The notes under the pieces are model-generated. The model did no database searches. It had not been told where the DNA came from and worked only from the letters and a program-made list of their open reading frames with translations. Made by a program: the position numbers and the translations under genes. Shown in pieces: positions 24,102 to 39,554 of a stretch of 64,000 nucleotides of DNA (the stretch's first letter is position 1; each line of letters starts with the position of its first letter). The stretch lies in the sequence record MK327931.1. One strand, given 5' to 3'.

Positions 24102-24111
24102 ATAGCACCTT

Positions 24112-24508: not shown

Positions 24509-24509
24509 A

Positions 24510-24713
24510 TTAGTACTCGATTAAAAGGGCAAGGATATAATAGTATTGCATACTTTCTGCCCCTTGTAAAGCATTTCTTATGATATTACTCCTGTACGAG
24601 TTCAGGAGTTTAGGACAACGTTTGTAGTGTATAAAAGTATTTTGTGTATACAGTAGGCTTTCTCGTAGACCTTTTGTTGGTAGTGCATCGATGTAGTACT
24701 GTTCAATGTTCAT
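24510..24713 (-). CDS. HKEYY-related paralogue (67 aa)
   Basis: EQYYIDALP...YYYILALLIEY. Confidence 0.8.
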   Translation of the reverse strand: MNIEQYYIDALPTKGLRESLLYTQNTFIHYKRCPKLLNSYRSNIIRNALQGAESMQYYYILALLIEY

Positions 24714-24937
24714 ATAGATAGCAGTACTAAGATTTTTGATAATTGTTTATTGCTATCCCCGCAGATGTTGCTGTGTAAAATACTCACAATGAGGGTATCA
24801 ATTGCATTGTTCATCATAAGGGTGCATCTTGGACTATTATAATTTTTTAGCTCAATTAGCCACGAACTATCCGAGAGAAATTCCCCGTACTCTAGTTCAT
24901 TTAGAGTATTGAGGTAGTACTTAAGAGTATTTGTCAT
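24710..24937 (-). CDS. HKEYY-related paralogue (75 aa), first gene of the operon
   Basis: GGAG SD; KYYL...ILVLLSI. Confidence 0.75.
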   Translation of the reverse strand: MTNTLKYYLNTLNELEYGEFLSDSSWLIELKNYNSPRCTLMMNNAIDTLIVSILHSNICGDSNKQLSKILVLLSI

Positions 24938-24959
24938 GTGTAGTTCTCCTTATATTCCT

Positions 24960-24992
24960 TCTATAGTACACCAGTACTGAAAGGATGTCAAG
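24960..24992 (-). promoter_or_regulatory. sigma70 promoter driving the HKEYY operon
   Basis: TTGACA-17-TACTAT with AGTACT in spacer. Confidence 0.75.
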
Positions 24993-25039
24993 GGTTTTCT
25001 TTATGGGGTAAATATGATATAATGAATAAGGAGGGATTT

Positions 25040-26176
25040 ATGTTACCTTTTGTTAGAATGTTAAATTATGGGAACGTAGCACCAGAAAAACTAAAAGTTC
25101 GTGATATTGTTGCAGGTGCTAATTCATTATTACTAATAACCGAGGATAATGAATTATGGGTGCGTGGTAATAATTCGTATGGCAAATTAGGTATAGGAAC
25201 TGATACTATAGTGAATGTAACCGAGTGGACTAAAGTTAGAGATGATGTTAAGTTTGCTTGTGCTAGTAATTTAGTATGCGTTGTATTAACTGTAGATAAT
25301 AAAATTTTCTACTGTGGTGATGAATGGTTTGAATCTGGTGGTTCGACAAGTTCTAAAGTTGTTACATGGAAAGATGTTACGACACAATTTAGTGCAGTGA
25401 ATCTAAGCACAGTACGTGAAATGAAAATGACTTCTTATTGTGTAGGATTACTTACAAATGATAATAGATTATATGCTAAAGGATATGATAATAACCAATC
25501 ATTTGGTGGTTCAACAAGCAAAGTTAATGCTGTATTAGTTGCGTCAAATGTTTCAAAATTCTACACTTCTCTATCTGGTACTATATATTCTAGTACTACT
25601 GGTGGTTACTACCGCTGTGGTATAAGCAATACTGGAGCATTGGGTACTAGCACAAATTTAACTTCTTATAATTTGTACTCTGCTCCCGAATTTGCATCCG
25701 AATGTGCAGTTGGTATGTCAACATTAAACTCTGGTATATTATATTATGATACTAATGGTAGCACTAGATATGTTATAGCAGGTCAAAATAGATATTATCA
25801 ACTAGGTAATTCTTCTTCAAATACCACAAACGTATATTCGTATACAGAATTAACCGGATATAGAGGCAGGTTTAGGGATTTGTGGAGTGATATGAATAAC
25901 TCTGTTCTTTCTTTTGCTATAAGCACAGATGGCAATACTTTATATTATGCTGGTACTAACACTACACTATCTTCTGGTGACCCTGGTGTTGAATATTCAT
26001 CTACATTTAAAGAAGTACCACACGGGTTTAATGATATAACAAAGGCGGCATCGTTAGCCTATCTATCTATAGTGCAAGATTCAACGGGATGGTATTATTC
26101 TGGAAATGCAACTACGTTATATGGTTTGCCATCGAGTGATGAATTTATACCATTACCATTACCAACAATAATTTAA
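25040..26176 (+). CDS. MLPF-leader RCC1/BLIP-II-like beta-propeller 1 (378 aa)
   Basis: LWVRGNNSYGKLGIG repeats; start at MLPFVRM after AAGGAGG. Confidence 0.85.
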   Translation: MLPFVRMLNYGNVAPEKLKVRDIVAGANSLLLITEDNELWVRGNNSYGKLGIGTDTIVNVTEWTKVRDDVKFACASNLVCVVLTVDNKIFYCGDEWFESGGSTSSKVVTWKDVTTQFSAVNLSTVREMKMTSYCVGLLTNDNRLYAKGYDNNQSFGGSTSKVNAVLVASNVSKFYTSLSGTIYSSTTGGYYRCGISNTGALGTSTNLTSYNLYSAPEFASECAVGMSTLNSGILYYDTNGSTRYVIAGQNRYYQLGNSSSNTTNVYSYTELTGYRGRFRDLWSDMNNSVLSFAISTDGNTLYYAGTNTTLSSGDPGVEYSSTFKEVPHGFNDITKAASLAYLSIVQDSTGWYYSGNATTLYGLPSSDEFIPLPLPTII

Positions 26177-26247
26177 ATACAGGCCAGTACTTGATACTGG
26201 CTTTTCTTTTTTGTATTAAATATAGTATAATGAATAAGGAGGGAAAT

Positions 26248-27450
26248 ATGTTACCTTTTGGAAGAATGGTTAAGTACGCAAATATTGCACCAGGTCCAGA
26301 ACCTGTAGAGTTCTCAGATGTTTTACAACAACATTATACAAACTGTATGTATCTCCATAACCCAACTAATACTTTATATGGTTATGGTAGTAATAACTTT
26401 TACCAATTTGGTCTTGGGAATTCAGCAGCAGTTTCGTCATTTACAGTACTTGCAAGGAACTGTGCAGCCTTTTGGCTTGGTGTTCAAGGTTCATTGATGA
26501 TTGATTTGGATAATAAAATATACTACACTGGGTCGGTTGGTGCATTTTCTGATTATGGAGATGCAACACCTGTTAATGGTTATTTGACAACATGGACTGA
26601 TGTTACTGTTGCATTTAATAAAATAGGTGTTATGGCTAATATGATCAAGAGTGTATATATAGGTGAAAGTACTAGAATATTATTAACCGATGGTAGAGTA
26701 ATTGCGTGTGGAAGAAATACTAATGGTGAATGTGGCTCTGGTAATAAAAATTCCATCCCTACACTCACAGTTATGACTAATATGGGTGAAGTTACACATA
26801 TGGCATGTTCATTACAAGGAACGCACTATATCAAATCAAATAAAGATGCATGGTTTTGTGGTAAGGATAACTTTGGTGAAAGTGGATGTGGTGGTAGTTT
26901 TGTTGTATATTTGAACAAATTCGTGATTAGTAATGTAGAACATATTAGTACTACATACGATGTTACTTGGTGGTTTACTACTGGTGGGCCTGTATATTAT
27001 AGCGGGGCTAACAGTTCTGGACAAGCTGGTAATGGTACGACTACATCGGTAAATCAGCTAACACCAATTAGGAACACATCGGTCACGGTTGATGTAAGTA
27101 AGTACAGTACTTTTATTTGTCCAAGTAATATGGGAAATGCATCAATTGGTGCACCTATGGCACAATACGCACCATATGTTAGAAGTAGTGGTGCTAACTC
27201 ATATGGTCAAGAAGGTAATGGAACTAATACATTAGTTAGAACTTGGAATATTTTTAATCTTAGTGCAATAAGTGGTGGTTATGACAATGTTCTTATGGCA
27301 TCTAAAGATTGGAGCAGAACCATAATAATTACTAAAGATTATAAATTATATGCATGTGGTGGCTGGAATGGTAGTGGTGGTAGATTACCTGATGGCACTT
27401 ATAGTATTACTACACTAACATTAATGCCAACGCAGTTATGGCAACAATAG
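26248..27450 (+). CDS. MLPF-leader RCC1-like beta-propeller 2 (400 aa)
   Basis: YGYGSNNFYQFGLG, SGANSSGQAGNG repeats. Confidence 0.85.
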   Translation: MLPFGRMVKYANIAPGPEPVEFSDVLQQHYTNCMYLHNPTNTLYGYGSNNFYQFGLGNSAAVSSFTVLARNCAAFWLGVQGSLMIDLDNKIYYTGSVGAFSDYGDATPVNGYLTTWTDVTVAFNKIGVMANMIKSVYIGESTRILLTDGRVIACGRNTNGECGSGNKNSIPTLTVMTNMGEVTHMACSLQGTHYIKSNKDAWFCGKDNFGESGCGGSFVVYLNKFVISNVEHISTTYDVTWWFTTGGPVYYSGANSSGQAGNGTTTSVNQLTPIRNTSVTVDVSKYSTFICPSNMGNASIGAPMAQYAPYVRSSGANSYGQEGNGTNTLVRTWNIFNLSAISGGYDNVLMASKDWSRTIIITKDYKLYACGGWNGSGGRLPDGTYSITTLTLMPTQLWQQ

Positions 27451-27458
27451 GAGGGAAT

Positions 27459-28568
27459 ATGTTACCTTTTGGAAGAATGATTAGGTATGGAAATATTGTC
27501 CCTGGTCCTAAAAAAATAATTAAAGTTGGTGCTTCTACCCAAGGCCAATTCTTATTGACTGATTCACATGATTTATATTACATAGGTAGAAATCAAGGTG
27601 GTGAATCTGGAAATGGTAATACCAACACGGTGTCTTCGTGGACATTAGTAAGTGCAGATGTTTCTAATTTTTTCGTGGGTGATCGTACACTTGTTATTAT
27701 TAAAAATGATAATACGATATGGACATCAGGTCAAACGTACTGGTTCTCATCTTCTACAACTACTTCTTACAGTACTGTATTAGTTGAAAGAACTAATTGG
27801 TTTACCAATGCTATACCAGTAAGTGAAATTGCTAATATTGTATGCACAAATGGTTTAATATTTGTACTTAGCACTAATTCAGTACTCTATGGTGCAGGAG
27901 ATAATGGATATCGTGGTTCTTTGGGTATTGGTTCATCATCAATTTACACATTAACTCAATGTGCTACGAACGTTCGTAAAGTAATGACCAATGCGAATGA
28001 TAGTATGTATCTTACATTAGATAATAAGCTATATAGTTCTGGATGGAATAGTAGTGGGCAGCATGGTACGGGGAACCAAACACAAATTAACACTTGGGGA
28101 TTGCGTAGTTCTGGTGTAATCGATGCAGCCATTGGTGGTAATGCATTAAATTACTATAATGGTACATCATATTTCGTATGTGGTCAAACTCCAAACTTTC
28201 TTAGTTCAGGTACGACTACATTCCGTGCAGTTCCTTTAAGTACTTTGCCTAATAGTTCTCCATTGTTTATGACGAATTCACCTGCCTTAAATACTGCTAC
28301 ACAAATGGTAATTACTAGTACATATCAGAAGGGTGTTGGGGCGAACCGTGGTTTGGGATTAAACAATTCTCAAACTGGTGCTATATATAGTGCTACCAAT
28401 TTACAATTACCCGTTGAAGTTAGTGAGATTAGGGATGTTCTTTTTAGTGATGGTTTGACATCGATATTAACCAAAAATGGAGACGTGTATAGTACTGGAT
28501 CGTATTACGCCATTCCAGGTGCAATCGAGGATGTTGCAGTCTTTACTAAAATTGATTTACCAAAATAA
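27459..28568 (+). CDS. MLPF-leader RCC1-like beta-propeller 3 (369 aa)
   Basis: SSGWNSSGQHGTG repeats. Confidence 0.85.
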   Translation: MLPFGRMIRYGNIVPGPKKIIKVGASTQGQFLLTDSHDLYYIGRNQGGESGNGNTNTVSSWTLVSADVSNFFVGDRTLVIIKNDNTIWTSGQTYWFSSSTTTSYSTVLVERTNWFTNAIPVSEIANIVCTNGLIFVLSTNSVLYGAGDNGYRGSLGIGSSSIYTLTQCATNVRKVMTNANDSMYLTLDNKLYSSGWNSSGQHGTGNQTQINTWGLRSSGVIDAAIGGNALNYYNGTSYFVCGQTPNFLSSGTTTFRAVPLSTLPNSSPLFMTNSPALNTATQMVITSTYQKGVGANRGLGLNNSQTGAIYSATNLQLPVEVSEIRDVLFSDGLTSILTKNGDVYSTGSYYAIPGAIEDVAVFTKIDLPK

Positions 28569-28638
28569 CATAATGCCAGTACTCTGTACTGGCTTTCTTA
28601 TTTGTATTAAATATAGTATAATGAATAAAGGAGGGAAT

Positions 28639-29808
28639 ATGTTACCTTTTGGAAGAATGATTAAGTACGGAAATATTGCACCTGCTAAACCAAATATTAA
28701 AAAAATACTTGCTAACAACTATAATGTTGCTGTTTTAACAAACAGTGGTGATTTATATGTGCGTGGTGAGAATGCAAATGGTCTTTTGGGTTTAGGTCAC
28801 AAAAATACTGTTACTACATGGACTTATAGTACTTCTGGTGTTCAAGATTTTTGGATGGGAGCCACGACGATAGTTCTTAAGAAAAGCAATGATGAAATAT
28901 GGTACAGTGGAAGTTCAACAACTGTTGGTATGAAAGGGGCAGCAGTATCAATATGGACTTCTGCTATGCCAACATTCGATACATTAACATTACCAATATT
29001 AGATATAGCAGTTAGTTATCAGACTACAAGTGTGTTACTGTCAGACCAAACAATATGGAGTACTGGAGTGGGGTCAGATGGTCAGTTGGGTGATGGGACA
29101 ACAACTAACAATATTGCTGGTAAATTCGTCAAAAGTACTGTTCCGGCCGCAGCAAATCAATTACCTGTTAAATTGTTTGCAAGTAATTTAATGCACGGTT
29201 ATGTTACAAACCAAGGATGGCTATTTTATACAGGAAGAGTAAATGCAGTTACAAGTTCAGGAAGTAAGTTATATACTATATATTATGGTGCTCCTACCAG
29301 CTTAAGAAATACAATTAATATCAAGTACTACACGGAGAATGGTACTTCAATGGCAATGGCAATTGGTACTGATCCAAATGGAAAAACCATCATCGCAAAT
29401 GGCGGTTCGAGAATATTTGGTGCACAAGCAGATGGGACAAATGGTTCTCTCAATGATTATAGAGCATTTGAGGTTCAAACTGCTTCACTAATGCCACCCG
29501 GTGATGTAGTAAGCATTGCTAACAATACTTCATATTATAACCAAGTTATTGCTACAACAGATGGTATATATTGTTGCGGCTACAATCAATCTTCAGAAGC
29601 TGGTATGTTAGGTATTGGTACATCTACCAATGCATTGGTATATACCAAAGCAATCGTGCCTGATGGGTTTGATTATAGTAAGTCGCAGATGGCAGGTGGG
29701 TATAACCGAACTTATATAACTGATGGTAATTTTGTATATAGCACAGGGACAAATGTCACATATGGTGGCGTTAGTAGCTTAGAATTTGTATTAGATTCAC
29801 CAGTTTAA
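28639..29808 (+). CDS. MLPF-leader RCC1-like beta-propeller 4 (389 aa)
   Basis: LYVRGENANGLLGLG, WSTGVGSDGQLGDG. Confidence 0.85.
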   Translation: MLPFGRMIKYGNIAPAKPNIKKILANNYNVAVLTNSGDLYVRGENANGLLGLGHKNTVTTWTYSTSGVQDFWMGATTIVLKKSNDEIWYSGSSTTVGMKGAAVSIWTSAMPTFDTLTLPILDIAVSYQTTSVLLSDQTIWSTGVGSDGQLGDGTTTNNIAGKFVKSTVPAAANQLPVKLFASNLMHGYVTNQGWLFYTGRVNAVTSSGSKLYTIYYGAPTSLRNTINIKYYTENGTSMAMAIGTDPNGKTIIANGGSRIFGAQADGTNGSLNDYRAFEVQTASLMPPGDVVSIANNTSYYNQVIATTDGIYCCGYNQSSEAGMLGIGTSTNALVYTKAIVPDGFDYSKSQMAGGYNRTYITDGNFVYSTGTNVTYGGVSSLEFVLDSPV

Positions 29809-29879
29809 ATATATGCCAGTACTCTGTACTGGCATTCTTATTTGTATTAAATATAGTATAATGAATAAAGGAGGGAAAT

Positions 29880-31028
29880 ATGTTACCTTTTGCAAGAATG
29901 ATGAATTATGGGAATATTGCCCCTGGTAAGGATAGGCGTTTTAAAATATATTCAAGTGATTCTATGTATCTTCATGATACTTATACTAATAAGTTGTATG
30001 CATCTTCTGCGACGAATTGGGGTACTGGAACAGGTGTAGCATCGAGTAAATTTATTCTTTGTGCAGAGAATGTTAAACGAGTTCTATTGGAAGATAACAG
30101 TAGTAGTTGTCAATTGTATGAAGAGAAAGGTACTGGAAAAGTTTTTATCACTGGTAACACGAAGGCATTCACTGGTGTAACTGATACAAAAACTTTGTGG
30201 ACGGACTGTACTACGTGGATAACATCAGGTGGTATTAATGTTTCTGATATAAAATACATGAGTAGTTTTAATGATATGAAGGTGAATTTGATAACAAACG
30301 ATGGTACGTTGTATTGTTGTGGAGTTAACAATAACTCGAACCTATCATCATTTGGTGATGGTACAAACATTAATTCTTTTAACACATTCAAAAGGGTAGA
30401 TACTATAACTTCGGTTAAAAAGGCAGTTGGTAACATATACCTAAAAGAAGATAATACTTTATGGGGTTGTGGTTTTAACTATTACTATCAGTTAGGTACA
30501 GGTAATCAAACTTCTATTACTGGGGTGACGATGATTGCTTCGGATGTTATAGATTTTGATGTAAGTTATCAAAGTACATTTTTTATTAAATCGGATAATA
30601 ATTTGTACGCTTGTGGTAAACAGTTCGGTGCACAATACGGGAACGAATTTGGCACAGGTGGTACTTCTTCATCTACCGATATACAATACAAAACTCCGAC
30701 ATTATTGAGTTCAGGAGTTTATACTCTATATACTTGTGTTAGTAACATGGCATCACATATAGCTAAAGGTGATGAAGTTCTATACGCATCTGGGTCGAAT
30801 GGATTTGGTCAATTAGGTGTTGGTAATAATATTAATCAGTACTCATATACTCCTTCGTATACTTCGTTTAATAGTTCGTGTAATTTGGTACGCACTCCAT
30901 CTGGTTCACTTATACTTACGGACACTGAGCAATTATATTATTGTGGGTATGCTATGGTAGTAATGGGGGGAATTGCTGGACAAAACATTCTTAGTTATAC
31001 AGAAGTTGATATGTCATTTATACAATGA
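29880..31028 (+). CDS. MLPF-leader RCC1-like beta-propeller 5 (382 aa)
   Basis: WGCGFNYYYQLGTG, ASGSNGFGQLGVG. Confidence 0.85.
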   Translation: MLPFARMMNYGNIAPGKDRRFKIYSSDSMYLHDTYTNKLYASSATNWGTGTGVASSKFILCAENVKRVLLEDNSSSCQLYEEKGTGKVFITGNTKAFTGVTDTKTLWTDCTTWITSGGINVSDIKYMSSFNDMKVNLITNDGTLYCCGVNNNSNLSSFGDGTNINSFNTFKRVDTITSVKKAVGNIYLKEDNTLWGCGFNYYYQLGTGNQTSITGVTMIASDVIDFDVSYQSTFFIKSDNNLYACGKQFGAQYGNEFGTGGTSSSTDIQYKTPTLLSSGVYTLYTCVSNMASHIAKGDEVLYASGSNGFGQLGVGNNINQYSYTPSYTSFNSSCNLVRTPSGSLILTDTEQLYYCGYAMVVMGGIAGQNILSYTEVDMSFIQ

Positions 31029-31099
31029 TTTAATGCCAGTACACTGTACTGGCTTTCTTATTTGTATTAAATATAGTATAATGAATAAAGGAGGAATTT

Positions 31100-32242
31100 A
31101 TGTTACCTTTTGCAAGAATGATGAATTATGGGAATATTGCACCAGAACCAAAACCTCTATTTAAAAATAGATTACAAGCAAATTATAATACTCGTTTTTA
31201 TTTGCATGTTAATGGTGACTTGTACTGGTATGGTTCATCTTCATTTGGACAAGGTGGTAATGGTTCATTACAATCATCCACCGTATGGACCCGTGTGAAT
31301 AATAATATTGAACGTTACTGGGGTGGTGTTCTTGGTTCCATTGCCATTAAGAATGATGGAACTATTTGGTTCACAGGTGCTAGTATAGTAATGCCACAAA
31401 TCGGAACAAATACAAATGGGGTTTGGATTGATGTAACCCAGTACTTCACTGATTTTGGTGTCAGTGCTGATGATATTGATGGTATTGCTGTTGGGCAGAA
31501 TTTGCGTGTATTTTTAAAAAATGGAAAATGGTTCTACTGTGGTACTGGCGAAGCTGGTGTATTTGGTAACGCGTCAACAGCTAATGTCACATCGTTCAGA
31601 TACAGCACTATAGAAAATGTTAAAAGTTATGGCTGTTCTTTGCTCAGTACTGGGTTAGTACTTGATGATGGCTCCTATTGGTATGCAGGAAATACTGTTG
31701 CTCCTGGTAGTACAAAAACATCAAATATATTAAGTTTTACAAAAGACAATACGATCACCAATGCTATACAAGCTGTAAATACATACCGTACTTCATATAT
31801 ATTTCTTAATGATGGTTCAGTGAAGGTTGCTTCACCAAATGCATATGGTCAAGCTGGTGTAGGTACAGTATCAGCAGTACCAATGAGTACATTAATTCCC
31901 AATTTATCATTCCAAGGTGAAATAGAGTTGGTGGGTGGTTTATCCAACAACGAAGGGAATGGATGTGTTGTTAAAAATAATAATAAGTTATATACTTGTG
32001 GTCGAAATACCTATGGTCTATGTGGTGTTAATCAAACATCCGAAAATATACTAACTTTCACCGAAATGGTTCTTGATGCATTAGAAGGAAGACGAATTTC
32101 AGGCTTCGTAAATGATAATTTCTATTCAATGATAATTGATGAAAATAACAATTTGTATATGTGTGGTTTGGCTGAACTTGGAAATGTTCCAGTCAATAGA
32201 GTTCCAACAAGGGTTCCTGATTCACTTCTACCGTGGAAATAA
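31100..32242 (+). CDS. MLPF-leader RCC1-like beta-propeller 6 (380 aa)
   Basis: LYTCGRNTYGLCG. Confidence 0.85.
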   Translation: MLPFARMMNYGNIAPEPKPLFKNRLQANYNTRFYLHVNGDLYWYGSSSFGQGGNGSLQSSTVWTRVNNNIERYWGGVLGSIAIKNDGTIWFTGASIVMPQIGTNTNGVWIDVTQYFTDFGVSADDIDGIAVGQNLRVFLKNGKWFYCGTGEAGVFGNASTANVTSFRYSTIENVKSYGCSLLSTGLVLDDGSYWYAGNTVAPGSTKTSNILSFTKDNTITNAIQAVNTYRTSYIFLNDGSVKVASPNAYGQAGVGTVSAVPMSTLIPNLSFQGEIELVGGLSNNEGNGCVVKNNNKLYTCGRNTYGLCGVNQTSENILTFTEMVLDALEGRRISGFVNDNFYSMIIDENNNLYMCGLAELGNVPVNRVPTRVPDSLLPWK

Positions 32243-32312
32243 TATAATGCCAGTATCAAGTACTGGCATTTCTTTTTGATTAAATATAGTATAACAAATA
32301 AAGGAGGGAATT

Positions 32313-33500
32313 ATGTTACCTTTTGCAAGAATGATGAATTATGGGAATATTGCCCCAGTACCACTTCAAATTAAGAAAATAATCCCAACTGATTTAGATG
32401 TTGTGGTTCTGTATACGGATGGTCAACTATATGCACGTGGGAATAATAGTTTTGGGAAATTCGGTAGAGGAAACAACACTGCATTAAAATCATGGACATT
32501 AATTAGAGAAAACGTTAACGATTGCTGGCTTACACAAGGAACTTTATTAGTAAAAGACAATGACTCAAATTATTATTACTGTGGATATGGTAGTCATATT
32601 GGTTTATCAACTAGTACTACTACGTTTTTAAGTTATAACCAATATATTCAAAATTTGTACACACAAAGTTCAAGTACTTCAATTAAACAGATGTATGGAG
32701 GTACTACGTGGTTTACTTTCTTAATGGACAATAATACAATATGGAGTACAGGGTGGAACAGTGCTAGACAATTCGCCGATGGAACGGGAACTACTTATGA
32801 AATAACCGATGGTTCATTTGTAAAAGCGGTCACACCTAATGTTGATATTGCACAAATACAGTCAACAAATAACTGTGTATTGTTGTTTGATAAACAAAAT
32901 AATTTATATATTGGTGGTGTTACATCCGGTATAAGTTCCGCGACTACATGGACTTCATATAATCAATATACTTTATATCAACCAAATACAACATACACAA
33001 AAACGTTACAATACACAGGATGCTCAACTGGTGCAGTAAGTGCTTTAGTTGAAAATCCAAATACAGGAGCACGTCAGTTCCTTGTCGGTGGGTTAGCTAA
33101 TAATGGGGCATGGGGAAATAACACTACATCTAGCTCTGTTAATGGAGTTTTAGGAAATAACAGTACGACGTTACCACCCGGTACTTTGTATTCAATTCAT
33201 ACTGGATACCCACCACAATCTAGTATACTAATTACGAGTACTGGTGTATATGCAACTGGTTTAAATGCCAGTAGTTATGCTGGTTCATTGGGTATTGGTA
33301 CTAGTGCAACTGTTGGTAAGTTTACTGCATGTCCAATGCCTACACAAATAACATATTCTATGTATGATAAAATAAAAATATATAGAGGTTCATATCGTAC
33401 ATTTCTAACTGATATGAAAAATATATATTCAACCGGAACTTATGATGATGGTGGTCCTAGTACAACTAGATATGTACTAGATACACCCCGACAATTATAA
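32313..33500 (+). CDS. MLPF-leader RCC1-like beta-propeller 7 (395 aa)
   Basis: LYARGNNSFGKFGRG. Confidence 0.85.
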   Translation: MLPFARMMNYGNIAPVPLQIKKIIPTDLDVVVLYTDGQLYARGNNSFGKFGRGNNTALKSWTLIRENVNDCWLTQGTLLVKDNDSNYYYCGYGSHIGLSTSTTTFLSYNQYIQNLYTQSSSTSIKQMYGGTTWFTFLMDNNTIWSTGWNSARQFADGTGTTYEITDGSFVKAVTPNVDIAQIQSTNNCVLLFDKQNNLYIGGVTSGISSATTWTSYNQYTLYQPNTTYTKTLQYTGCSTGAVSALVENPNTGARQFLVGGLANNGAWGNNTTSSSVNGVLGNNSTTLPPGTLYSIHTGYPPQSSILITSTGVYATGLNASSYAGSLGIGTSATVGKFTACPMPTQITYSMYDKIKIYRGSYRTFLTDMKNIYSTGTYDDGGPSTTRYVLDTPRQL

Positions 33501-33572
33501 TATAATAGCCAGTACTCAGTACTGGCTTTTCTTTTTGTATTAAATATATTATAATGAATAAAGGAGGGAATT

Positions 33573-34310
33573 ATGTTACCTTTTGGAAGAATGATTAAGT
33601 ACGGGAATGAAATTGAATATAAGCCACATGGTGAACAATTAATCACGACAATAGGAACAACACAATTTACAGTTCCTGCTGGCGTTACCGAAATATCAGT
33701 ATGTGTTATTTCGCCGGGTGGTCAACGTGGTGCTGGCGGCGGCTTATCGTGGCGTAATAATATTCCGGTTACTAGTGGTGAGTACTTAAGTGTTTCTCTT
33801 ACGCATACCAACACTACTACACCAGTTGAAAACGGTTTATATCGTGGAACTGAAAAACTATGTGTTAGCTTCACTGGTGCATATACGGTTGGTGGACTAG
33901 GTGGAAAAGCTGCTAACGCTATTAATGATGGTGGTGGTAATGGTGGCAATACTGGTGTAAGTGGTGGTGCAGTCATTGGTGGTGGTGCTGGTGGCTACAC
34001 AGGTAAAGGTGGTAACGGAGATGCAATCACTGGTGAAAATGGTGCTGGCGGCGGCGGGGGCGGTGGTACATTCTATAATACCTCGTTCATTGGTACGGGT
34101 GGTGGTACTGGTATCATTGTTCAAGGTGCTAATGGTATTGGTGGTAGCTACGGTGGTTCATATAATGGTGGTGCTGGTAGTGGTGGTGCTGGTAAGATGT
34201 ATGGTGGTGGTGGTAGTATATGGGATAATTCTTCTTATACGGCTGCTGGTGGTGGTGCTGTGCGAATAATATGGGGAAATGGGAGATATTATCCTAACAA
34301 TTCAGTATAA
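33573..34310 (+). CDS. MLPF-leader glycine-rich protein (tail-fibre-type Gly-rich domain, 245 aa)
   Basis: FTVPAGVTEISVCVISPGG...GGGAVRIIWG pattern; same leader, no propeller repeats. Confidence 0.8.
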   Translation: MLPFGRMIKYGNEIEYKPHGEQLITTIGTTQFTVPAGVTEISVCVISPGGQRGAGGGLSWRNNIPVTSGEYLSVSLTHTNTTTPVENGLYRGTEKLCVSFTGAYTVGGLGGKAANAINDGGGNGGNTGVSGGAVIGGGAGGYTGKGGNGDAITGENGAGGGGGGGTFYNTSFIGTGGGTGIIVQGANGIGGSYGGSYNGGAGSGGAGKMYGGGGSIWDNSSYTAAGGGAVRIIWGNGRYYPNNSV

Positions 34311-34380
34311 AATATAGGCCAGTACAGAGTACTGGCTTTTCTTTTTGATTAAATATAGTATAATGAATAAAGGAGGAAAT

Positions 34381-35556
34381 ATGTTACCTTTTGCAAGAAT
34401 GGTTAAGTATGGAAATATTAAACCTGCACCTTCTGGTGTATTAAAGATTAGTACATCGTCATCACATATGGGTATGTTATTTGATAGTGGTAACTTATAT
34501 CTACGTGGAAGTGGTGCACATTATAGGCTAGGAAATAATAGTACGGAGTATGTACAAAATGGGTGGGTACAGTGTCCATATAAAGTTTCTAATGTTTGGT
34601 GTTTATTCGCAGGGACAATTATACTTACGACTGACGGAGAATTTTACTTAGCAGGGCAAATGAACTATGTCGGTGTATCTGCATCACCTGTTCCCGGATG
34701 GACTAATATTACATCTATATTGTCTACAATTCCAAGCCTTACTACAGTTCAAGATATAGCTTCTACCGAAACTACCGCATCCAATGGTTCTTTGTTAATT
34801 CTGTTAAGTGATGGTAACTTATATGGGATAGGCCGTAATGCTGGGGGTGAATTGGGTGTTACTGGAATAAAATCAACACCTATTTTGATTAACACGGGTG
34901 TTACTTTAATCGCAGGAACACAGTCGGGTGGTGCTTTCCATTTTGTAAAAAATGGACAATATTACAGATGTGGTAATAATGCAAGTTATAACCTAGGTTC
35001 AAGTTCATCTAAACTATCCACATTTACAGTAAGTACTGATATATCTGGAACAGTTATTGGTATTTCATGTACTCCTGAAACCACTTCAGTACTTACATCC
35101 AATAGAAATAAGATTAATGTATATACTGCTGGAAAAAACACTGATTATTGTTTAGGAATAGGGTATGGCGACACTACTATTATCATGAGTCCATTTAGTA
35201 CCACTCCTGTAATTAGTGGTATTATACCAGATGCTGGGTCGATGAACAATCACAGTTTGAATTATTTTATAATGGCAATGACACAGAATGGTAAACTTTA
35301 TACATGTGGTAGTGGTGTTCCTCTTGGTTGGCCTGTTACTACTGCATCAGAAAGATCTTATTACCACCAGGTACAATATGAGGATATGGATGTTGCACCA
35401 GATGTTAATGCATTTTCAGTACAAGGTGGTTCTGGTGTGTTATACGCGTTAGTAGGGACTAATGAGGTGTACTGGTGTGGTAACGGGTCTATGTTTCAGG
35501 AACAGAGTCCAGGTACACAACAAGTTAAAATGAAGAAAATGATTTTACCAGAATAG
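34381..35556 (+). CDS. MLPF-leader RCC1-like beta-propeller 8 (391 aa)
   Basis: LYGIGRNAGGELG; close to 37908-39077. Confidence 0.85.
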   Translation: MLPFARMVKYGNIKPAPSGVLKISTSSSHMGMLFDSGNLYLRGSGAHYRLGNNSTEYVQNGWVQCPYKVSNVWCLFAGTIILTTDGEFYLAGQMNYVGVSASPVPGWTNITSILSTIPSLTTVQDIASTETTASNGSLLILLSDGNLYGIGRNAGGELGVTGIKSTPILINTGVTLIAGTQSGGAFHFVKNGQYYRCGNNASYNLGSSSSKLSTFTVSTDISGTVIGISCTPETTSVLTSNRNKINVYTAGKNTDYCLGIGYGDTTIIMSPFSTTPVISGIIPDAGSMNNHSLNYFIMAMTQNGKLYTCGSGVPLGWPVTTASERSYYHQVQYEDMDVAPDVNAFSVQGGSGVLYALVGTNEVYWCGNGSMFQEQSPGTQQVKMKKMILPE

Positions 35557-35564
35557 GAGTGAAT

Positions 35565-36707
35565 ATGTTACCTTTTGGAAGAATGGTTAAGTACGGGAAT
35601 ATTATAATCCCACTTGATATAAAAAAAGTGGATTTAACAATAAATGGTTGTATAATACTTACAAGTGATGGTAAATTATATGCAAGTGGGACTCAATCAG
35701 CAGGTCAATTTGGATTAGGAAATAGAACAACACTTACAGTACGTACATTAATAGCCGAAAATGTGGTTAATTTTTGGTTTAGTCAGTCTGGATTAACTAT
35801 TTTAAAAAATGATAGTTCATATTGGTTTAGTGGAGCAGCATATGCCTATGGAGATAGTGGTAATGTTTTTATTAACATTGATAGTTTAATCAAAGACAAA
35901 TTTGACAATGCGAGTGAAATATATGTTGCACGTGATCATGCAACTATTATTGTAAACTCAGATGGTTCAGTTTGGGTTTTAGGTTCTAATTTATATAGTA
36001 TGATTGGGTTAGCAAGTACTACAACAAACGCCCCTACATGGACACAAAATACAAACCTTACTGGTGTTTCTAAAATGCAATTTGGTCATCTGAACGCATG
36101 TGGAATAAGATCGAATGGCGACGTTGTTGCGTGGGGTGAGAACAGATTCAACTGCTTCACAACTGTGGGCGGTACTGGTTACCTGACACCAAGAGTAGTT
36201 AAGTCAAATGTGATTGATTTTTATTTAACTGCAACATCTTGTTTTATGTGGAGTGATGCTACTTCTGTTTATTTTAGTGGCTATACTGGGGACACTGGAT
36301 TATTAAATTCTGCGGCTGGTACTACCTTTCAGTCATACAATATATACAGTGTAGCTCAACCGGAAACATATGTAAGTTCAGAGTTTCGTTTTATAAAGCA
36401 TACAAACTACAACTATGGTAATGCTGTTAACTTACCAGTATACGTTAAATTTAGAATTAATGGTGAAGTTTATAGTAGTGGATATAACTTAAGTAGTAGT
36501 TTGGGGGTAAATTCCGTTTCCACCAGCGTAAAAAATACAACTTTAGTTCCAGGTGCATCAAAAATGACATCGTGGGTGGCTGGTGATACTAATGTTAAAT
36601 TAGCTACTATTGATGGTAGTTTATATGGTGCAGGTAACGTACAATATATTTTAGATAAACCAAGTCAAGAAATTTATCCCACATATCAAAATTTAAATAT
36701 AATATAA
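35565..36707 (+). CDS. MLPF-leader RCC1-like beta-propeller 9 (380 aa)
   Basis: LYASGTQSAGQFGLG, VVAWGENRF. Confidence 0.85.
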   Translation: MLPFGRMVKYGNIIIPLDIKKVDLTINGCIILTSDGKLYASGTQSAGQFGLGNRTTLTVRTLIAENVVNFWFSQSGLTILKNDSSYWFSGAAYAYGDSGNVFINIDSLIKDKFDNASEIYVARDHATIIVNSDGSVWVLGSNLYSMIGLASTTTNAPTWTQNTNLTGVSKMQFGHLNACGIRSNGDVVAWGENRFNCFTTVGGTGYLTPRVVKSNVIDFYLTATSCFMWSDATSVYFSGYTGDTGLLNSAAGTTFQSYNIYSVAQPETYVSSEFRFIKHTNYNYGNAVNLPVYVKFRINGEVYSSGYNLSSSLGVNSVSTSVKNTTLVPGASKMTSWVAGDTNVKLATIDGSLYGAGNVQYILDKPSQEIYPTYQNLNII

Positions 36708-36717
36708 AGGAGGGAAT

Positions 36718-37897
36718 ATGTTACCTTTTTCTAGAATGGTTAAGTACGGGAATATAGCACCTGTATATGAATCTAGTGTGATTAAAATGCAAGCACCATC
36801 AGCTTTTACCAACAACACATTGATGATTCTGTATAAGAACGGTGATTTGTGGGGTATTGGCGGTAACAATGCTGGTATATTCGGTCTTGGAAATACAACG
36901 ACACAGACCAAATGGGGTCGCTTAATGCAAAATGTGAAAAATTTTTGGTGCACAAGGAATGCTTCATATAGCTTAGTTCAGACCAATGATAATAAATTTT
37001 ATTATGCAGGTTGGAACCTTTGGACTGGTACATCTAGTGCAGTTCAAAGTACTACATTTGTTGATTGTACGTCTTATTTTTCAGGTTTTAATGTGGATAA
37101 TATCAAGGAGATATATCCAAATGTTCGTAATATGTTTTTACTAACAAATGATAGTGTTCTTTACGCAATAGGTGATAATTCGACCTATGAGTTGGGTAGT
37201 AGTTCATCTACACTTACATCATTTACACAGGTTAATATTAATGTTAAAAAGGTTAGTTCATTTTTCAATAGTCCGACTTGGATAATTAAAAATGATAATT
37301 CAGTATGGCGATGTGGTAAAACTAGTACTGGTACATTGTTAACTGGTTCTGCTACTGATACGTTGACGATTTGGACAAAGTATAGTTTTCCTACAGGACA
37401 GTACCCCGTTGATATAATTTCATATAACAATATGTTGGGTATAGTTCTTAATGTAGATAATACTTATCCGCTATATGGTGTAGGGTCACAAAATTCACGG
37501 ACAATTAGGAAATGGTGTTCTATCTAATACTAATAAGATATCTTTAACGCCACAAAGTACTTATTTACAATTAACTAATGTTTCCGATTTTGAATTTATA
37601 CAAACATATTCACAAAATCCTAGGGGATTATTATATAGAAATGGAAGTCGTATTTTTGGAACAGGGTATAATAATTATGGACAGCTTGGTAACAATTCAT
37701 CTAATAATGCTTCAATTTTCGTCCAAGCACAATTTCCAAATTCTGTAGTTTATGATCCGTCAACATCGTTGGTTGCTGCGAATGACAATGCATTATTTGC
37801 ATATGTGAATGGGAAATTATACTACACTGGTATGTCTCCAGTAGGGACAGTTGTTGGTACATGGACTTTAACTGAATACCAATTGCCACAAATTTAA
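36718..37897 (+). pseudogene. MLPF-leader beta-propeller with a single +1 frameshift near 37490-37498
   Basis: ORF stops at 37527 but the +1 frame continues GQLGNG...GTGYNNYGQLGNN...LPQI to TAA 37897; span 1180 nt = 3n+1. Confidence 0.8.
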
Positions 37898-37907
37898 GGA
37901 GAAAATT

Positions 37908-39077
37908 ATGTTACCTTTTGGAAGAATGTTAAAGTACGGAAATATTAAACCAACTCTTCCTGAAATAAAGAAATTGGATGGTAGTCAATTACATGTCGGA
38001 TTACTTTATAGTACAGGGAATATGTACATGCGTGGTTCTGGTTCGAACTATAAATTAGGTACAGGGGATGCTAGTGATGTATTAGGTGGTTGGGTACATG
38101 TACCCTATGAAGTTGATGATTTTTGGGCGTGTGTATCCGGTACATTAATAAAGACTGTTGATAATAAATTATATTGTGCAGGTCTATACATGGGTGGATA
38201 TTTTGGGGCTAGTGGTTCATATGTTAACTGGACTGAAGTAACTTCATTATTTGTAGGTATTGACGTGTCGCAAATAAAGAATATAGAATTTACGTCAGCG
38301 GGTACTTCCGGTAGTACACTAATATTGATGTTAGATGGTCGTTTATATGGGTTCGGTATGAACAGTAGATCTGAGTTAGGTGTTAATAACAAAGTTGTAT
38401 CTCCCATTCTTATAGATACTGGGGTAAGTGCAATAGGAGCACATAAGTTAGGCGGTTCATCGTTCCATTATATAAAAGGCGGTAAGTACTACAGATGTGG
38501 AACATCGGTTGGTAGTAATATTGGAAGTTCTTCTTTAACTACTTTTACGGTATTGAGTATTCCTGATAACGTTATATCTATGCAAATATTATATGACAAC
38601 GTACAGTTATTATGTTTAGGAAGTTCTGGATATAGTATCTATATGGCTGGTTCTAATGATTATGGTGGAAGAGGTGTTGGCGGTTCTACGGTTTATACTA
38701 CATTCAGGAAAATAGATCTTACAGGATTTGGTGTTGTTCCCAGTGAAATACTATTTGAAAATGCTGGAAATGGTTATGTTAATATATCAACTGATAGTAC
38801 TGGAGTATATACATGTGGTGGTGGAGCGGGTGTTAACGGTTTAGGTAGACCAACTAATGTAATACCAAGTTCACAGTTGGGAGTAGTTCAGTTCAGTACT
38901 GGAGTAGAACAATCAAATATAAGTCGTGTGTATTCACAGAGTTCGAGTTCTGTTATATATTGTATAGTCAATAATGAATTGTACTGGGCTGGTAGTAATT
39001 CATATTTTACTGATCAAACCACAAATACTGGTACACAATTTTCATTTATTAAGATGAAGGATATGCCTTCTGCTTAG
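37908..39077 (+). CDS. MLPF-leader RCC1-like beta-propeller 10 (389 aa)
   Basis: LYGFGMNSRSELG. Confidence 0.85.
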   Translation: MLPFGRMLKYGNIKPTLPEIKKLDGSQLHVGLLYSTGNMYMRGSGSNYKLGTGDASDVLGGWVHVPYEVDDFWACVSGTLIKTVDNKLYCAGLYMGGYFGASGSYVNWTEVTSLFVGIDVSQIKNIEFTSAGTSGSTLILMLDGRLYGFGMNSRSELGVNNKVVSPILIDTGVSAIGAHKLGGSSFHYIKGGKYYRCGTSVGSNIGSSSLTTFTVLSIPDNVISMQILYDNVQLLCLGSSGYSIYMAGSNDYGGRGVGGSTVYTTFRKIDLTGFGVVPSEILFENAGNGYVNISTDSTGVYTCGGGAGVNGLGRPTNVIPSSQLGVVQFSTGVEQSNISRVYSQSSSSVIYCIVNNELYWAGSNSYFTDQTTNTGTQFSFIKMKDMPSA

Positions 39078-39148
39078 ATTTTATGCCAGTGCCTTGTACT
39101 GGCATTTTTTGTCCTAAATATAATAACGATTTACATTTGGAGGATACA

Positions 39149-39554
39149 ATGCTACCCTTTCGAAGAATTATCACATCATCAAAAAAGAACATACAACCTT
39201 CTGTTACAAAAATAGCTTCATCTGATAAGACAGTTTTTGCCCTTATGTCAGATGGTACGTTGTACAGTAGAGGTTCTCAATAGTTTGGGTTATTAATATT
39301 TTTCTAATCATATTATAACTTTATTAGGTGTTTACTCAACTGGTTATAACACAAGACAATTAGGTATAGGTACACAAACCGATGCGTCGGCCTATACCAA
39401 ATGTGTACTACCAATAGAGATGAATAACGTATATGTTACAGCAACTTTATACAGAACTTACTTAACCGATGGTATACAAATTTACAGTACTGGACAAAAT
39501 ATTACAGACGGTGGAGTTGCCAGTACTGTATTTGTCAAAGATTCACCATTTTAG
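39149..39554 (+). pseudogene. internally deleted MLPF-leader propeller relic
   Basis: MLPFRR...LYSRGSQ* then, in another frame, GVYSTGYNTRQLGIG...RTYLTDG..YSTG...DSPF*, like the C-termini of propellers 4 and 7. Confidence 0.8.

What the first reader, a model, noticed from the sequence alone, without database searches (positions are those of the whole stretch)
25005..39554. Thirteen-cassette display system: a common MLPFxRMxxYGN leader on divergent beta-propellers
Seen: every gene starts with the same roughly 15-aa peptide, then diverges into RCC1/BLIP-II-like repeats rich in S, T, N, G and Y. Most are preceded by one roughly 65-bp DNA module (GCCAGTA/TACTGGC terminator, TAAATAT, TATAAT, AAGGAGG) that continues as near-identical DNA into the leader. 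The leader is not a Sec signal (basic, no hydrophobic core). Established: TATAAATA-type boxes are T4-like late promoters, and propellers are common binding scaffolds. Inference: the leader is a docking tag that loads interchangeable binding heads onto a virion site, while the repeated DNA allows accordion-like gain, loss and swapping. Such arrays have been noted in this phage group as far as I recall, but I know of no mechanism for them.
Basis: partly seen in the sequence, partly recalled or inferred. Interest (0 to 1): 0.8.

Follow-up and report, generated by a model that had tools for sequence, protein, structure and literature searches.

The report
Shared address tag on phage binding proteins
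A giant E. coli phage carries a row of 13 late genes whose very different binding proteins all begin with the same 12-15 residue peptide, most likely an address tag that attaches them to the virus particle, and the genes are shuffled between related phages at a repeated DNA joint.

Summary
The window is the first 64 kb of jumbo coliphage vB_EcoM_G17 (Asteriusvirus). Exactly 13 ORFs start with MLPFxR, all on the + strand at 25040-39149:
- ten intact RCC1-like 7-bladed propellers
- one glycine-rich, tail-fibre-adhesin-like protein
- one frameshifted propeller
- one deletion remnant

Seven are preceded by a near-identical hairpin + TAAATA box + SD module.

New here:
- MLPF is invariant in 70 listed genes from 8 sources spanning Asteriusvirus, Eneladusvirus and Mimasvirus, despite synonymous codon changes.
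- The leader sits on unrelated cargo: RCC1, Kelch, ConA-like lectin and Gly-rich domains.
- It lies outside the predicted fold in both AlphaFold models.
- It is not followed by a T4-type protease site.

Published virion proteomes list leader proteins: 8 in phAPEC6, 7 in CBB, 3 in JP4, and at least one in GAP32. The TAAATA box matches that of the structural genes. Cassette order and content differ among G17, phAPEC6 and 121Q, and 27 of 29 homology-block ends fall at the module/leader.

Best reading: a virion-attachment tag on interchangeable accessory adhesins, shuffled by PeSL-like recombination. The docking site, and whether it is external or internal, is not shown. The RCC1 array was already noted in the literature. 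I found no description of the shared leader.

The parts
25002..25039 (+). Promoter-like box (TAAATATGATATAAT) and SD of the first cassette; no upstream hairpin
25040..26176 (+). Cassette A: leader MLPFVRMLNYGN + RCC1-like propeller (378 aa). No close orthologue in phAPEC6 or 121Q
26181..26247 (+). Module copy: hairpin GCCAGTAC..ATACTGGC, T-run, TAAATA box/TATAAT, AAGGAGG
26248..27450 (+). Cassette B: leader + propeller (400 aa)
27459..28568 (+). Cassette C: leader + propeller (369 aa). SD only, no module. 99% identical copy sits at a different array position in phAPEC6 and 121Q
28573..28638 (+). Module copy
28639..29808 (+). Cassette D: leader + propeller (389 aa). AlphaFold model: residues 1-20 low confidence, 7-bladed propeller from about residue 20
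29813..29879 (+). Module copy
29880..31028 (+). Cassette E: leader + propeller (382 aa)
31033..31099 (+). Module copy (95% identical over 111 nt to the copy at 29813)
31100..32242 (+). Cassette F: leader + propeller (380 aa). 98% identical to the phAPEC6 41.23-kDa protein detected in virions
32246..32312 (+). Module copy
32313..33500 (+). Cassette G: leader + propeller (395 aa)
33506..33572 (+). Module copy
33573..34310 (+). Cassette H: same leader on a non-propeller glycine-rich protein (245 aa; phrog_4474). AlphaFold pLDDT 90.7 with residues 1-19 disordered. Best PDB match is the cyanophage Pam3 tail fibre
34316..34380 (+). Module copy
34381..35556 (+). Cassette I: leader + propeller (391 aa)
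35565..36707 (+). Cassette J: leader + propeller (380 aa). SD only. No close orthologue in phAPEC6 or 121Q
36718..37527 (+). Cassette K, N-terminal part: leader + truncated propeller (269 aa). 99% identical to phAPEC6 gp007 (30.06 kDa), which was detected in virions
37484..37906 (+). Cassette K, C-terminal part in the +1 frame (about 125 aa plus stop, propeller blades). The frameshift lies within an RCC1 'GQLGNG' motif, and the 269-aa truncation is shared with phAPEC6 and 121Q
37908..39077 (+). Cassette L: leader + propeller (389 aa). SD only. 99% identical to phAPEC6 gp010, detected in virions
39083..39148 (+). Degenerate module copy (hairpin GCCAGTGC..GTACTGGC, CCTAAATATAAT)
39149..39283 (+). 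Cassette M remnant: second leader subtype MLPFRRIITSS, 44 aa
39285..39533 (+). Out-of-frame C-terminal remnant of cassette M (44% identical to residues 299-388 of cassette D). Internal deletion, so a decaying copy

Best explanation
The region is a hyperplastic array of late-expressed, minor virion proteins.

Anatomy. Each protein has three parts:
- (1) An N-terminal peptide with MLPF invariant, then xR[MI]xxYGN in this genus. It is flexible and not part of the fold.
- (2) A short proline-rich linker (I-A-P-x-P).
- (3) A stand-alone binding domain. Here that is ten intact RCC1-like 7-bladed propellers, one frameshifted propeller and one glycine-rich domain of the tail-fibre-adhesin type. Other genera also carry Kelch propellers and ConA-like lectins.

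Mechanism (inferred). The peptide is an address tag that docks each protein to one shared site on the particle. About a dozen different heads then compete for the same positions and are each present in low copy. Because the cargo folds are those of receptor- or glycan-binding modules, and the proteins are poor in charged residues, the site is most likely external (fibre, hair or tail), and the proteins would act as accessory adhesins.

Turnover (shown by comparison, mechanism inferred). A repeat of about 111 nt, made of terminator hairpin, TAAATA late-type box, SD and the first 40-45 nt of the leader, flanks the cassettes. It provides the homology for unequal or inter-phage recombination, which moves, adds, deletes and replaces whole cassettes without disturbing their expression.
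For: Leader is real and selected at the protein level:
- 13 of 13 cassettes carry it.
- MLPF is invariant in all 70 leader-bearing genes listed from G17, phAPEC6, 121Q, Serratia BF, Yersinia fHe-Yen9-04, GAP32, CBB and one IMG/VR contig. Synonymous variation is seen at L (TTA/CTA/TTG), P (CCT/CCA/CCC) and F (TTT/TTC).
- It persists in the genes that lack the DNA module.

Leader is separable from cargo:
- pLDDT is 45-66 over residues 1-20 in both models, and the folds begin at about residue 20.
- Homologous cargo in non-jumbo phages aligns only from residue 11-36.
- The same leader sits on RCC1, Kelch, RCC1+Kelch, Laminin_G_3-like and Gly-rich cargo.

Virion association:
- phAPEC6 Table 1 lists 8 array proteins, which I matched to leader ORFs by molecular weight.
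- The CBB MS table lists CBB_536, 537, 548, 549, 551, 552 and 553, with up to 50.7% coverage. All start with MLPF.
- GAP32 gp001 was found by MS.
- JP4 lists 3.

Late expression: TAAATA lies 30-50 nt upstream of MCP, scaffold, baseplate and other MS-verified structural genes, and 31-36 nt upstream of the array genes.

Cargo points outward:
- The Gly-rich model best matches the Pam3 tail fibre gp24 and the Bxb1 tail tip, and BFVD 'baseplate component' and 'minor tail protein' entries.
- Pam3 gp24 is a docking domain plus a receptor-binding Gly-rich domain (PMC9608196).
- The CR9 RCC1 homologue is annotated 'tail protein' and lies next to a tail-fibre gene.
- Array proteins have only about 6% K+R and 6% D+E, with pI 5.1-9.2.

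Shuffling:
- Cassette order is A-B-C-D-E-F-G-H-I-J-K-L-M in G17, E'-F-C-B'-D'-G'-H-X-I'-K-Y-L-M in phAPEC6 and E-F-C-F2-G-H-E2-X-I-K-Y-M in 121Q.
- 27 of 29 homology-block ends lie within -100..+50 nt of a leader ATG, against 13.5% expected.
- Decaying copies are present.
Against: - No experiment shows that the leader is needed or sufficient for incorporation, and no partner is identified.
- MS coverage in the Asteriusvirus phages is low: 3-17% in phAPEC6 and single peptides in JP4. Both lists also contain non-structural enzymes, so some carry-over cannot be excluded.
- The external location rests on fold analogy and composition only. 121Q and phAPEC6 have an unassigned inner body.
- The Foldseek match of the Gly-rich cargo to Pam3 gp24 has probability 0.98 but TM only 0.29.
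- BLAST blocks would tend to end in any conserved joint, so the boundary statistic shows cassette-wise exchange rather than the exact crossover point.
- The module also contains a perfect TATAAT, so the promoter class is not proven.
Confidence: 0.55

Rival explanations
1. T4-internal-protein-like system. The leader is a capsid-targeting sequence that loads the proteins onto the prohead scaffolding core. They end up inside the head, possibly forming or joining the inner body, and are ejected with the DNA. The divergent propellers would act as BLIP-II-style tight-binding inhibitors of host defence proteins.
For: - The phage belongs to the T4 superfamily, with a T4-like prohead protease/scaffold and an L-x-E maturation site in the major capsid protein.
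[quoted passage not shown] This is the closest published anatomy.
- Fast turnover between close relatives fits an arms race.
- 121Q and phAPEC6 have an inner body of unknown composition.
- The proteins are virion-associated in low amounts.
Against: - No conserved protease site follows the leader. Only 5 of 34 array proteins have [LI]xE in the first 45 residues, and never at a fixed position.
- The cargo is 40-kDa rigid propellers, lectin-like domains and a tail-fibre-type Gly-rich domain.
- The proteins are charge-poor and near neutral, unlike basic DNA-associated internal proteins.
- Passage of a 7-bladed propeller through a tail tube would need unfolding (inference).
Confidence: 0.2
2. The leader has no targeting role. 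It is conserved because it is part of the expression and recombination cassette: the translation-initiation region, mRNA structure, and gene conversion among repeats. Virion incorporation, if real, is mediated by the folded domains.
For: - Within Asteriusvirus the first four codons are almost invariant even at synonymous sites: ATG TTA CCT TTT in 34 of 38 copies.
- The DNA repeat runs uninterrupted from the SD into the leader.
- Block boundaries fall 34-45 nt into the leader.
Against: - Across genera the codons differ (CCT vs CCA/CCC, TTA/CTA/TTG) while MLPF stays invariant.
- Positions 10-12 (Y-G-N) are kept through synonymous changes (TAC/TAT, GGA/GGG, AAT/AAC) within G17 itself.
- The leader is kept in genes without the module, and in genera whose upstream DNA is unrelated.
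- Unrelated folds would each need their own docking surface.
Confidence: 0.1
3. The database annotation is correct: these are 'DNA condensation / regulator of chromosome condensation' proteins that organise the packaged genome, as the phAPEC6 authors suggested.
For: - Pfam RCC1 repeats.
- Presence in virions, and an inner body in phAPEC6/121Q.
Against: - The name comes only from the fold family.
- The proteins are not basic: net charge -5 to +7 and about 6% K+R.
- The same leader and locus carry lectin-like, Kelch and Gly-rich fibre-type proteins.
- CBB has the leader array without any RCC1 protein.
- A DNA-organising core would not be expected to differ in content between near-identical phages.
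Confidence: 0.05

Closest known systems
T4 internal proteins (IPI, IPII, IPIII, Alt) with their capsid targeting sequence (CTS)
   Same: A short conserved N-terminal leader on otherwise unrelated cargo. The locus is hypervariable between related T4-superfamily phages, and the products end up in the virion (PMC3012670).
   Different: - No protease site follows the leader here.
- The cargo is large, charge-poor binding domains rather than small basic proteins.
- The location in the particle is unknown.
- I did not align the leader to the T4 CTS.
PeSL cassettes (promoter-early stem-loop) of T4-type phages
   Same: A composite stem-loop terminator plus promoter plus SD repeated between non-essential genes of a hyperplastic region. 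Differences between close relatives are whole-cassette insertions, deletions and replacements with junctions in the repeat (PMC2839356, PMC4122927).
   Different: - The box shared with the structural genes is the late-type TAAATA, not a sigma-70 early promoter.
- The stem is GCCAGTAC/GTACTGGC rather than GGGG/CCCC.
- The repeat continues 40-45 nt into the coding sequence, so the recombination joint and the protein tag are one unit.
- Mini-circles were not tested.
Stand-alone tail-fibre adhesins with an N-terminal attachment element: S16/T2-type gp38 and cyanophage Pam3 gp24
   Same: A small protein made of an N-terminal docking part plus a glycine-rich receptor-binding domain with a variable tip (PMC9608196). 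Cassette H is the structural counterpart.
   Different: The docking part there is a folded helical domain. Here it is a 12-15 residue peptide, and it is shared by about a dozen unrelated heads in one genome.
Multi-receptor-binding-protein sets with common N-terminal anchor domains (CBA120 TSP1-4, G7C, Klebsiella jumbo phages RaK2/K64-1)
   Same: Many alternative binding or enzymatic heads share a common N-terminal attachment principle, in related large myoviruses. This rests on my own knowledge and was not checked here.
   Different: - Those anchors are structured domains of 100 or more residues on trimeric spikes.
- No depolymerase domains were seen among the cargo examined here.
- RaK2 and K64-1 did not appear among the records listed for either cargo search.

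Membership tests
RCC1-like beta-propeller (Pfam RCC1 / RCC1_2 / RLD) | RCC1 repeat signature detectable by profile HMM | tested here: met
   Six of the 8 propellers scanned pass the RCC1_2 gathering score (22 bits, scores 22.4-39.2). WD40_RLD is matched in all 8 but below its cut-off of 150.
RCC1-like beta-propeller (Pfam RCC1 / RCC1_2 / RLD) | Seven-bladed propeller fold | tested here: met
   AlphaFold pLDDT 84.8, pTM 0.85. Foldseek top hits are UVR8, HERC2 RLD, RPGR and RCC1, E 1e-21 to 1e-16, TM 0.65-0.77.
RCC1-like beta-propeller (Pfam RCC1 / RCC1_2 / RLD) | Chromatin/DNA-condensation or GEF activity (basis of the database name) | not testable with these tools
   Composition argues against DNA binding: about 6% K+R and pI 5.1-9.2. 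There is no functional data.
T4-type capsid targeting sequence (CTS) system | Short conserved N-terminal leader on divergent cargo in a variable locus | tested here: met
T4-type capsid targeting sequence (CTS) system | Leader followed by a prohead-protease site ([LI]-x-E) and removed on maturation | tested here: not met
   The capsid protein has KVMLTE|S giving the reported 37-kDa mature form. Only 5 of 34 array proteins have [LI]xE in residues 1-45, at varying positions. Actual processing is not testable here.
T4-type capsid targeting sequence (CTS) system | Products located inside the head and ejected into the host | not testable with these tools
   Only bulk virion MS is available.
T4-type capsid targeting sequence (CTS) system | Sequence similarity of the leader to the T4 CTS | not tested
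   I made no alignment to the T4 CTS.
PeSL regulatory/recombination cassettes | Composite stem-loop terminator plus promoter plus SD repeated between genes of a hyperplastic region | tested here: met
   Seven full copies, one degenerate, one promoter-only.
PeSL regulatory/recombination cassettes | Promoter is a strong sigma-70-like early promoter | tested here: inconclusive
   - The module has a perfect TATAAT but no consistent -35; only weak CTGGCA-N16/17-TATAGT matches appear in 2 copies.
- It carries the TAAATA box shared with structural genes.
- There is no transcript data.
PeSL regulatory/recombination cassettes | Differences between close relatives are cassette-wise with junctions in the repeat | tested here: met
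   27 of 29 block ends fall within -100..+50 of a leader ATG, and near-identical cassettes sit in different orders.
PeSL regulatory/recombination cassettes | Formation of excised mini-circles | not testable with these tools
   Needs inverse PCR or long reads on infected cells.
Glycine-rich tail-fibre adhesin (Pam3 gp24 / S16 gp38 type; Pfam Gly_rich_2) - cassette H only | Glycine-rich domain by sequence profile | tested here: inconclusive
   - The G17 protein itself has no Pfam hit.
- Its Serratia BF homologues hit PF21722 below threshold (17.9 and 20.2 bits against 24.3).
- Many database homologues carry PF21722, and it matches phrog_4474 at E 4e-67.
Glycine-rich tail-fibre adhesin (Pam3 gp24 / S16 gp38 type; Pfam Gly_rich_2) - cassette H only | Fold match to a solved fibre adhesin | tested here: inconclusive
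   Best PDB hit is 7ypx (Pam3 fibre), E 7.5e-4 and probability 0.98, but TM 0.29. BFVD hits to Gly-rich domain proteins reach TM up to 0.74.
Glycine-rich tail-fibre adhesin (Pam3 gp24 / S16 gp38 type; Pfam Gly_rich_2) - cassette H only | Folded N-terminal attachment domain | tested here: not met
   Only a disordered 19-residue leader precedes the domain.

The most novel reading that the evidence does not exclude
Rak2-like jumbo phages use a natural peptide-tag display system. A 12-15 residue N-terminal address (MLPF...) is sufficient to plug any folded binding domain into one shared external socket on the virion. Each particle would then carry a random sample of about a dozen adhesins (population-level bet-hedging). 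The tag's own DNA doubles as the recombination joint that exchanges heads between phages. A second tag (M-[LIF]-E-[LM]-[LM]...) may do the same in rV5-like phages.
Probability: 0.3. Interest if true: 0.8.

Novelty: new variant of a known kind. Interest (0 to 1): 0.62.

Why it matters
**Biology.** If the leader is a portable virion-address tag, it would explain how these very large phages keep and exchange a repertoire of accessory binding proteins. It would also replace a misleading database name ('DNA condensation protein') that has spread through dozens of genomes.

**Use.** It would give a very short natural tag for loading foreign proteins onto a jumbo-phage particle.

**Evolution.** Fusing the protein tag and the recombination joint into one repeat extends the PeSL idea from gene regulation to protein targeting.

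**Testability.** The question is directly testable with a laboratory coliphage; Sharanji, which carries an identical array, is recorded with E. coli K-12 MG1655 as host.

Tried and rejected
- Profile search of the propeller alignment against 1.84 billion representatives. It was swamped by 120,676 RCC1 hits, mostly giant multi-repeat proteins, so it gave no census of the leader. The only use: most of the listed best-scoring stretches start at profile position 18 or later (none before position 9), and only the phage proteins match from position 1.
- IMG/VR scan for the SD + leader DNA pattern. It returned only 121Q itself and one 355-kb contig. That contig still supplied an RCC1+Kelch 667-aa cargo.
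- Word-based homologue search with cassette D. It found few relatives but did find a diverged leader, MIPFVRILKHNN.
- Literature. The Sharanji paper, a 2026 jumbo-phage review and the Iyer et al. comparative paper do not mention RCC1, propellers or the leader. No cryo-EM paper locating these proteins was found. The phAPEC6 supplements are not held, so peptide-level evidence on whether the N-terminus is retained could not be read.
- PDB sequence search with the Gly-rich profile found nothing meaningful.
- Leader as part of the propeller (Velcro closure): rejected. It has low pLDDT outside the fold and is also present on non-propeller cargo.
- Hair or whisker fibres made of the RCC1 proteins: unlikely. 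CBB is hairy yet has no RCC1 homologue. Hairs carrying leader proteins at their tips is not excluded.
- Only part of a full genome was scanned for other MLPF starts: 64 kb of G17, plus 1-18 kb and 135-285 kb of phAPEC6. About 52% of the phAPEC6 genome was not scanned.
- Searches were input errors.

Full report
**Identity and context.** The window is the first 64 kb of Escherichia phage vB_EcoM_G17 (MK327931.1, 370.8 kb, genus Asteriusvirus, the 121Q/PBECO4 group of Rak2-like jumbo myoviruses), with identical coordinates. The array is also 100% identical in phage Sharanji. G17 annotates the genes as hypothetical proteins. Relatives call them 'regulator of chromosome condensation' or 'putative DNA condensation protein'. 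The array lies between a minus-strand run of 60-75 aa paralogues (20.9-24.9 kb) and a minus-strand run of small, apparently membrane-spanning paralogues (40.2-43.0 kb). It is not inside the main structural module.

**Checking the observation.**
- A six-frame scan finds exactly 13 ORF starts of the form MLPFxR, all on the + strand between 25040 and 39149. A relaxed pattern finds no other ORF start in the window.
- Twelve share MLPFxRMxxY[GA]N. The last, a 44-aa remnant, shares MLPFxR.
- After residue 16 the paralogues are only 21-38% identical, leaving aside the remnant. Five of the 11 invariant columns of a 15-sequence alignment lie in the first 12 residues.
- The DNA module is equally real. 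A 28-mer containing the TAAATA box, TATAAT and AAGGAGG occurs 7 times (0 expected). The hairpin CCAGTA-N-TACTGG occurs 7 times in the array (0.04 expected). The repeat unit spans about 111 nt, from the hairpin into the leader codons, with two copies 95% identical.
One cassette (33573-34310) is a glycine-rich non-propeller. Cassette K (36718) is a +1 frameshifted propeller whose last 125 residues continue in another frame. Cassette M (39149) is an internal-deletion remnant.

**What the proteins are.**
- Eight of nine proteins tested hit Pfam RCC1-type models.
- An AlphaFold model of cassette D (pLDDT 84.8, pTM 0.85) is a 7-bladed propeller. Its best PDB matches are UVR8, HERC2 RLDs and RCC1 (TM about 0.65-0.77).
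- Residues 1-20 have pLDDT 50-65 and lie outside the fold.
- Cassette H has no Pfam hit but matches phrog_4474. Its model (pLDDT 90.7) also leaves residues 1-19 disordered.
- Cassette H's best solved match is the cyanophage Pam3 tail fibre gp24 (probability 0.98, though TM only 0.29), followed by a Bxb1 tail-tip protein. In BFVD it matches glycine-rich domain proteins, some annotated as baseplate or minor tail proteins.
- Pam3 gp24 is an N-terminal docking domain plus a glycine-rich receptor-binding domain and resembles the S16 gp38 adhesin (PMC9608196).
- All array proteins are poor in charged residues (about 6% K+R, about 6% D+E, pI 5.1-9.2) and 43-58% S/T/N/G/Y. This does not fit the 'DNA condensation' label.

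**The leader beyond this phage.**
- tblastn shows the propellers across Rak2-like jumbo phages of Escherichia, Salmonella, Erwinia, Serratia, Yersinia, Cronobacter, Klebsiella and Xanthomonas. There the alignments start at residue 1. In smaller phages they start at residue 11-36.
- Syntenic arrays, always next to the membrane-protein paralogues where I examined them, were read in Serratia BF, Yersinia fHe-Yen9-04, GAP32 and CBB.
- Every gene in them starts with MLPF: MLPFPIISNT or MLPFxRIxxYGN in Eneladusvirus, and MLPF[PS]R[LM]xxY[GA]N in Mimasvirus.
- The cargo there includes ConA/Laminin_G_3-like 'virion structural proteins', Kelch propellers, Gly-rich proteins and, in an IMG/VR contig, a 667-aa RCC1+Kelch fusion.
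- Over the 70 genes listed, MLPF is invariant while its codons vary (CCT in Asteriusvirus, CCA/CCC elsewhere; TTA/CTA/TTG; TTT/TTC). Y-G-N is kept through synonymous changes. The conservation is therefore at the protein level.
- Two subtypes exist (YGN and IISNT). In Asteriusvirus the IISNT-like copy is the decaying last cassette.

**Are they in the particle?**
- The phAPEC6 virion proteome lists eight 'DNA condensation'/hypothetical proteins. Their masses match leader ORFs of the phAPEC6 array to within 0.01 kDa.
- Three of the eight are 98-99% identical to G17 cassettes F, K and L.
- Three of the five undetected ORFs are not annotated in the GenBank record, so they may not have been searchable. 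This is inference.
- In CBB, seven of nine MLPF proteins are in the MS table with 9.5-50.7% coverage.
- GAP32 gp001 was found by MS. JP4 lists three at single-peptide level, about 200-fold less abundant than a 24-kDa major component.
- So leader-bearing proteins are minor virion components in at least two genera. The truncated 269-aa product of cassette K is also detected, which fits incorporation through the N-terminal part.

**Timing.** In phAPEC6, MS-verified structural genes (major capsid, scaffold, baseplate wedge and others) carry TAAATA about 30-50 nt upstream of the start. Neighbouring non-structural genes show sigma-70-like or no such boxes. The CBB paper reports ATAAATA as the putative late motif of CBB/GAP32. 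The array module has TAAATA at -36 to -31. Late expression is thus likely but not measured, and the module also holds a perfect TATAAT.

**Targeting signal of which kind?**
- The phage has a T4-type prohead protease. Its capsid protein has KVMLTE|S at residue 43, giving 37.2 kDa, which agrees with the 37 kDa reported for mature 121Q capsid protein.
- Yet only 5 of 34 array proteins contain [LI]xE in the first 45 residues, never at a fixed place. A defining CTS feature is therefore not met.
- Together with the adhesin- or lectin-type cargo and the charge-poor composition, I favour an uncleaved docking tag for an external site. I keep the internal, ejected-inhibitor reading as the main rival (0.2).
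- No MLPF start exists among the structural genes of phAPEC6 (135-285 kb) or elsewhere in the window, so the tag is specific to this array.

**Turnover.**
- Cassette order and content differ among three phages of one genus. G17 has A B C D E F G H I J K L M. phAPEC6 has E' F C B' D' G' H X I' K Y L M. 121Q has E F C F2 G H E2 X I(frameshifted) K Y M.
- Near-identical cassettes (C, F, K, L at 98-100%) sit beside alleles of 51-86% identity or beside unrelated genes.
- Of 29 homology-block ends inside the array, 27 lie within -100..+50 nt of a leader ATG, typically 34-45 nt into the leader (13.5% expected, binomial P about 1e-21). Caveat: BLAST blocks naturally stop at a shared joint, so this shows cassette-wise exchange rather than exact crossovers.
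- This is the behaviour described for PeSL terminator-promoter cassettes in T4-type phages, which need less than 50 bp of homology (PMC2839356, PMC4122927). The difference is that the repeat here extends into the coding leader.

**Novelty and verdict.** The RCC1 paralogue array and its presence in virions are published (phAPEC6 and CBB papers). The following were not found in the literature I could search:
- the shared N-terminal leader
- its presence on unrelated cargo
- its conservation across genera
- the lack of a protease site
- the coupling of the tag to the recombination joint

I rate it a new variant of known kinds (CTS-like leader, PeSL-like cassette, gp38-like adhesins), with interest 0.62. 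All three of its own refutation tests fail to refute it as far as public data allow, but the docking role and site remain inferred.

Noticed in passing
Proteins P0029-P0129; locus L014 (Cronobacter phage CR9) 7916-9082 and 11063-11707: Homologues of the Gly-rich cargo outside the jumbo phages are also stand-alone proteins of about 250 aa. Many start with a different short conserved N-terminus, M-[LIF]-E-[LMAT]-[LM] (MLELL.., MIELLAISGTKP.., and PVP-SE1 'protein 19' MFEMML..). In CR9 the lectin-like virion protein starts MNEILIVGG. The RCC1-like 'tail protein' next to a tail-fibre gene starts MFPIPALTL. A parallel tag-plus-head arrangement may exist in rV5-like phages.
   Followed up: partly
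window 36718-37906: Cassette K carries a +1 frameshift inside an RCC1 'GQLGNG' motif (around 37494-37500). The 269-aa truncation is shared by G17, phAPEC6 and 121Q. The 269-aa product (phAPEC6 gp007) was still detected in virions. A fixed pseudogene, a functional truncation or translational frameshifting cannot be told apart.
   Followed up: partly
window 39149-39533; L007 18463-19615: The last cassette uses the second leader subtype (MLPFRRIITSS, close to the MLPFPIISNT of Eneladusvirus). It is decaying in all three Asteriusvirus genomes compared: an internal deletion in G17 and early truncation in phAPEC6 and 121Q.
   Followed up: partly
window 20934-24937, minus strand: A tandem run of at least 15 small (59-75 aa) ORFs on the minus strand, several visibly paralogous, interrupted by one 223-aa gene. 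[quoted passage not shown] Function unknown, with no PHROG hit for the two tested.
   Followed up: no
window 40239-43019, minus strand: A run of small, hydrophobic, apparently multi-pass membrane protein paralogues. It sits next to the MLPF array in all five genomes where I looked (G17, Serratia BF, Yersinia fHe-Yen9-04, CBB, phAPEC6). The linkage is conserved across genera and unexplained.
   Followed up: no
window 43924-45042, minus strand: HNH/homing-endonuclease-like gene (phrog_559, E 7e-24) just beyond the membrane-protein run.
   Followed up: no
window 26191-26247, 28477-28638, 34345-34380; JP4_581, P0002, P0014, P0028: Mechanical ORFs and some deposited annotations start upstream of the true ATG and read through the promoter/SD module (translating to ..ICIKYSIMNKGGN-MLPF..). 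This hides the common N-terminus in databases and may be why it went unremarked.
   Followed up: partly
window 40210-40233: A hairpin with the same CCAGTAC/GTACTGG stem as the array terminators lies between two minus-strand genes outside the array. A similar CCCAGTACTGATCTAGTACT sequence lies upstream of the phAPEC6 baseplate wedge gene. The stem may be a genome-wide terminator or protein-binding motif.
   Followed up: no
window 20001-40000: GC skew is positive from about 20 to 40 kb and negative elsewhere in the window. This includes 20-25 kb, where the genes are on the minus strand, so the skew switch does not simply follow coding strand.
   Followed up: no
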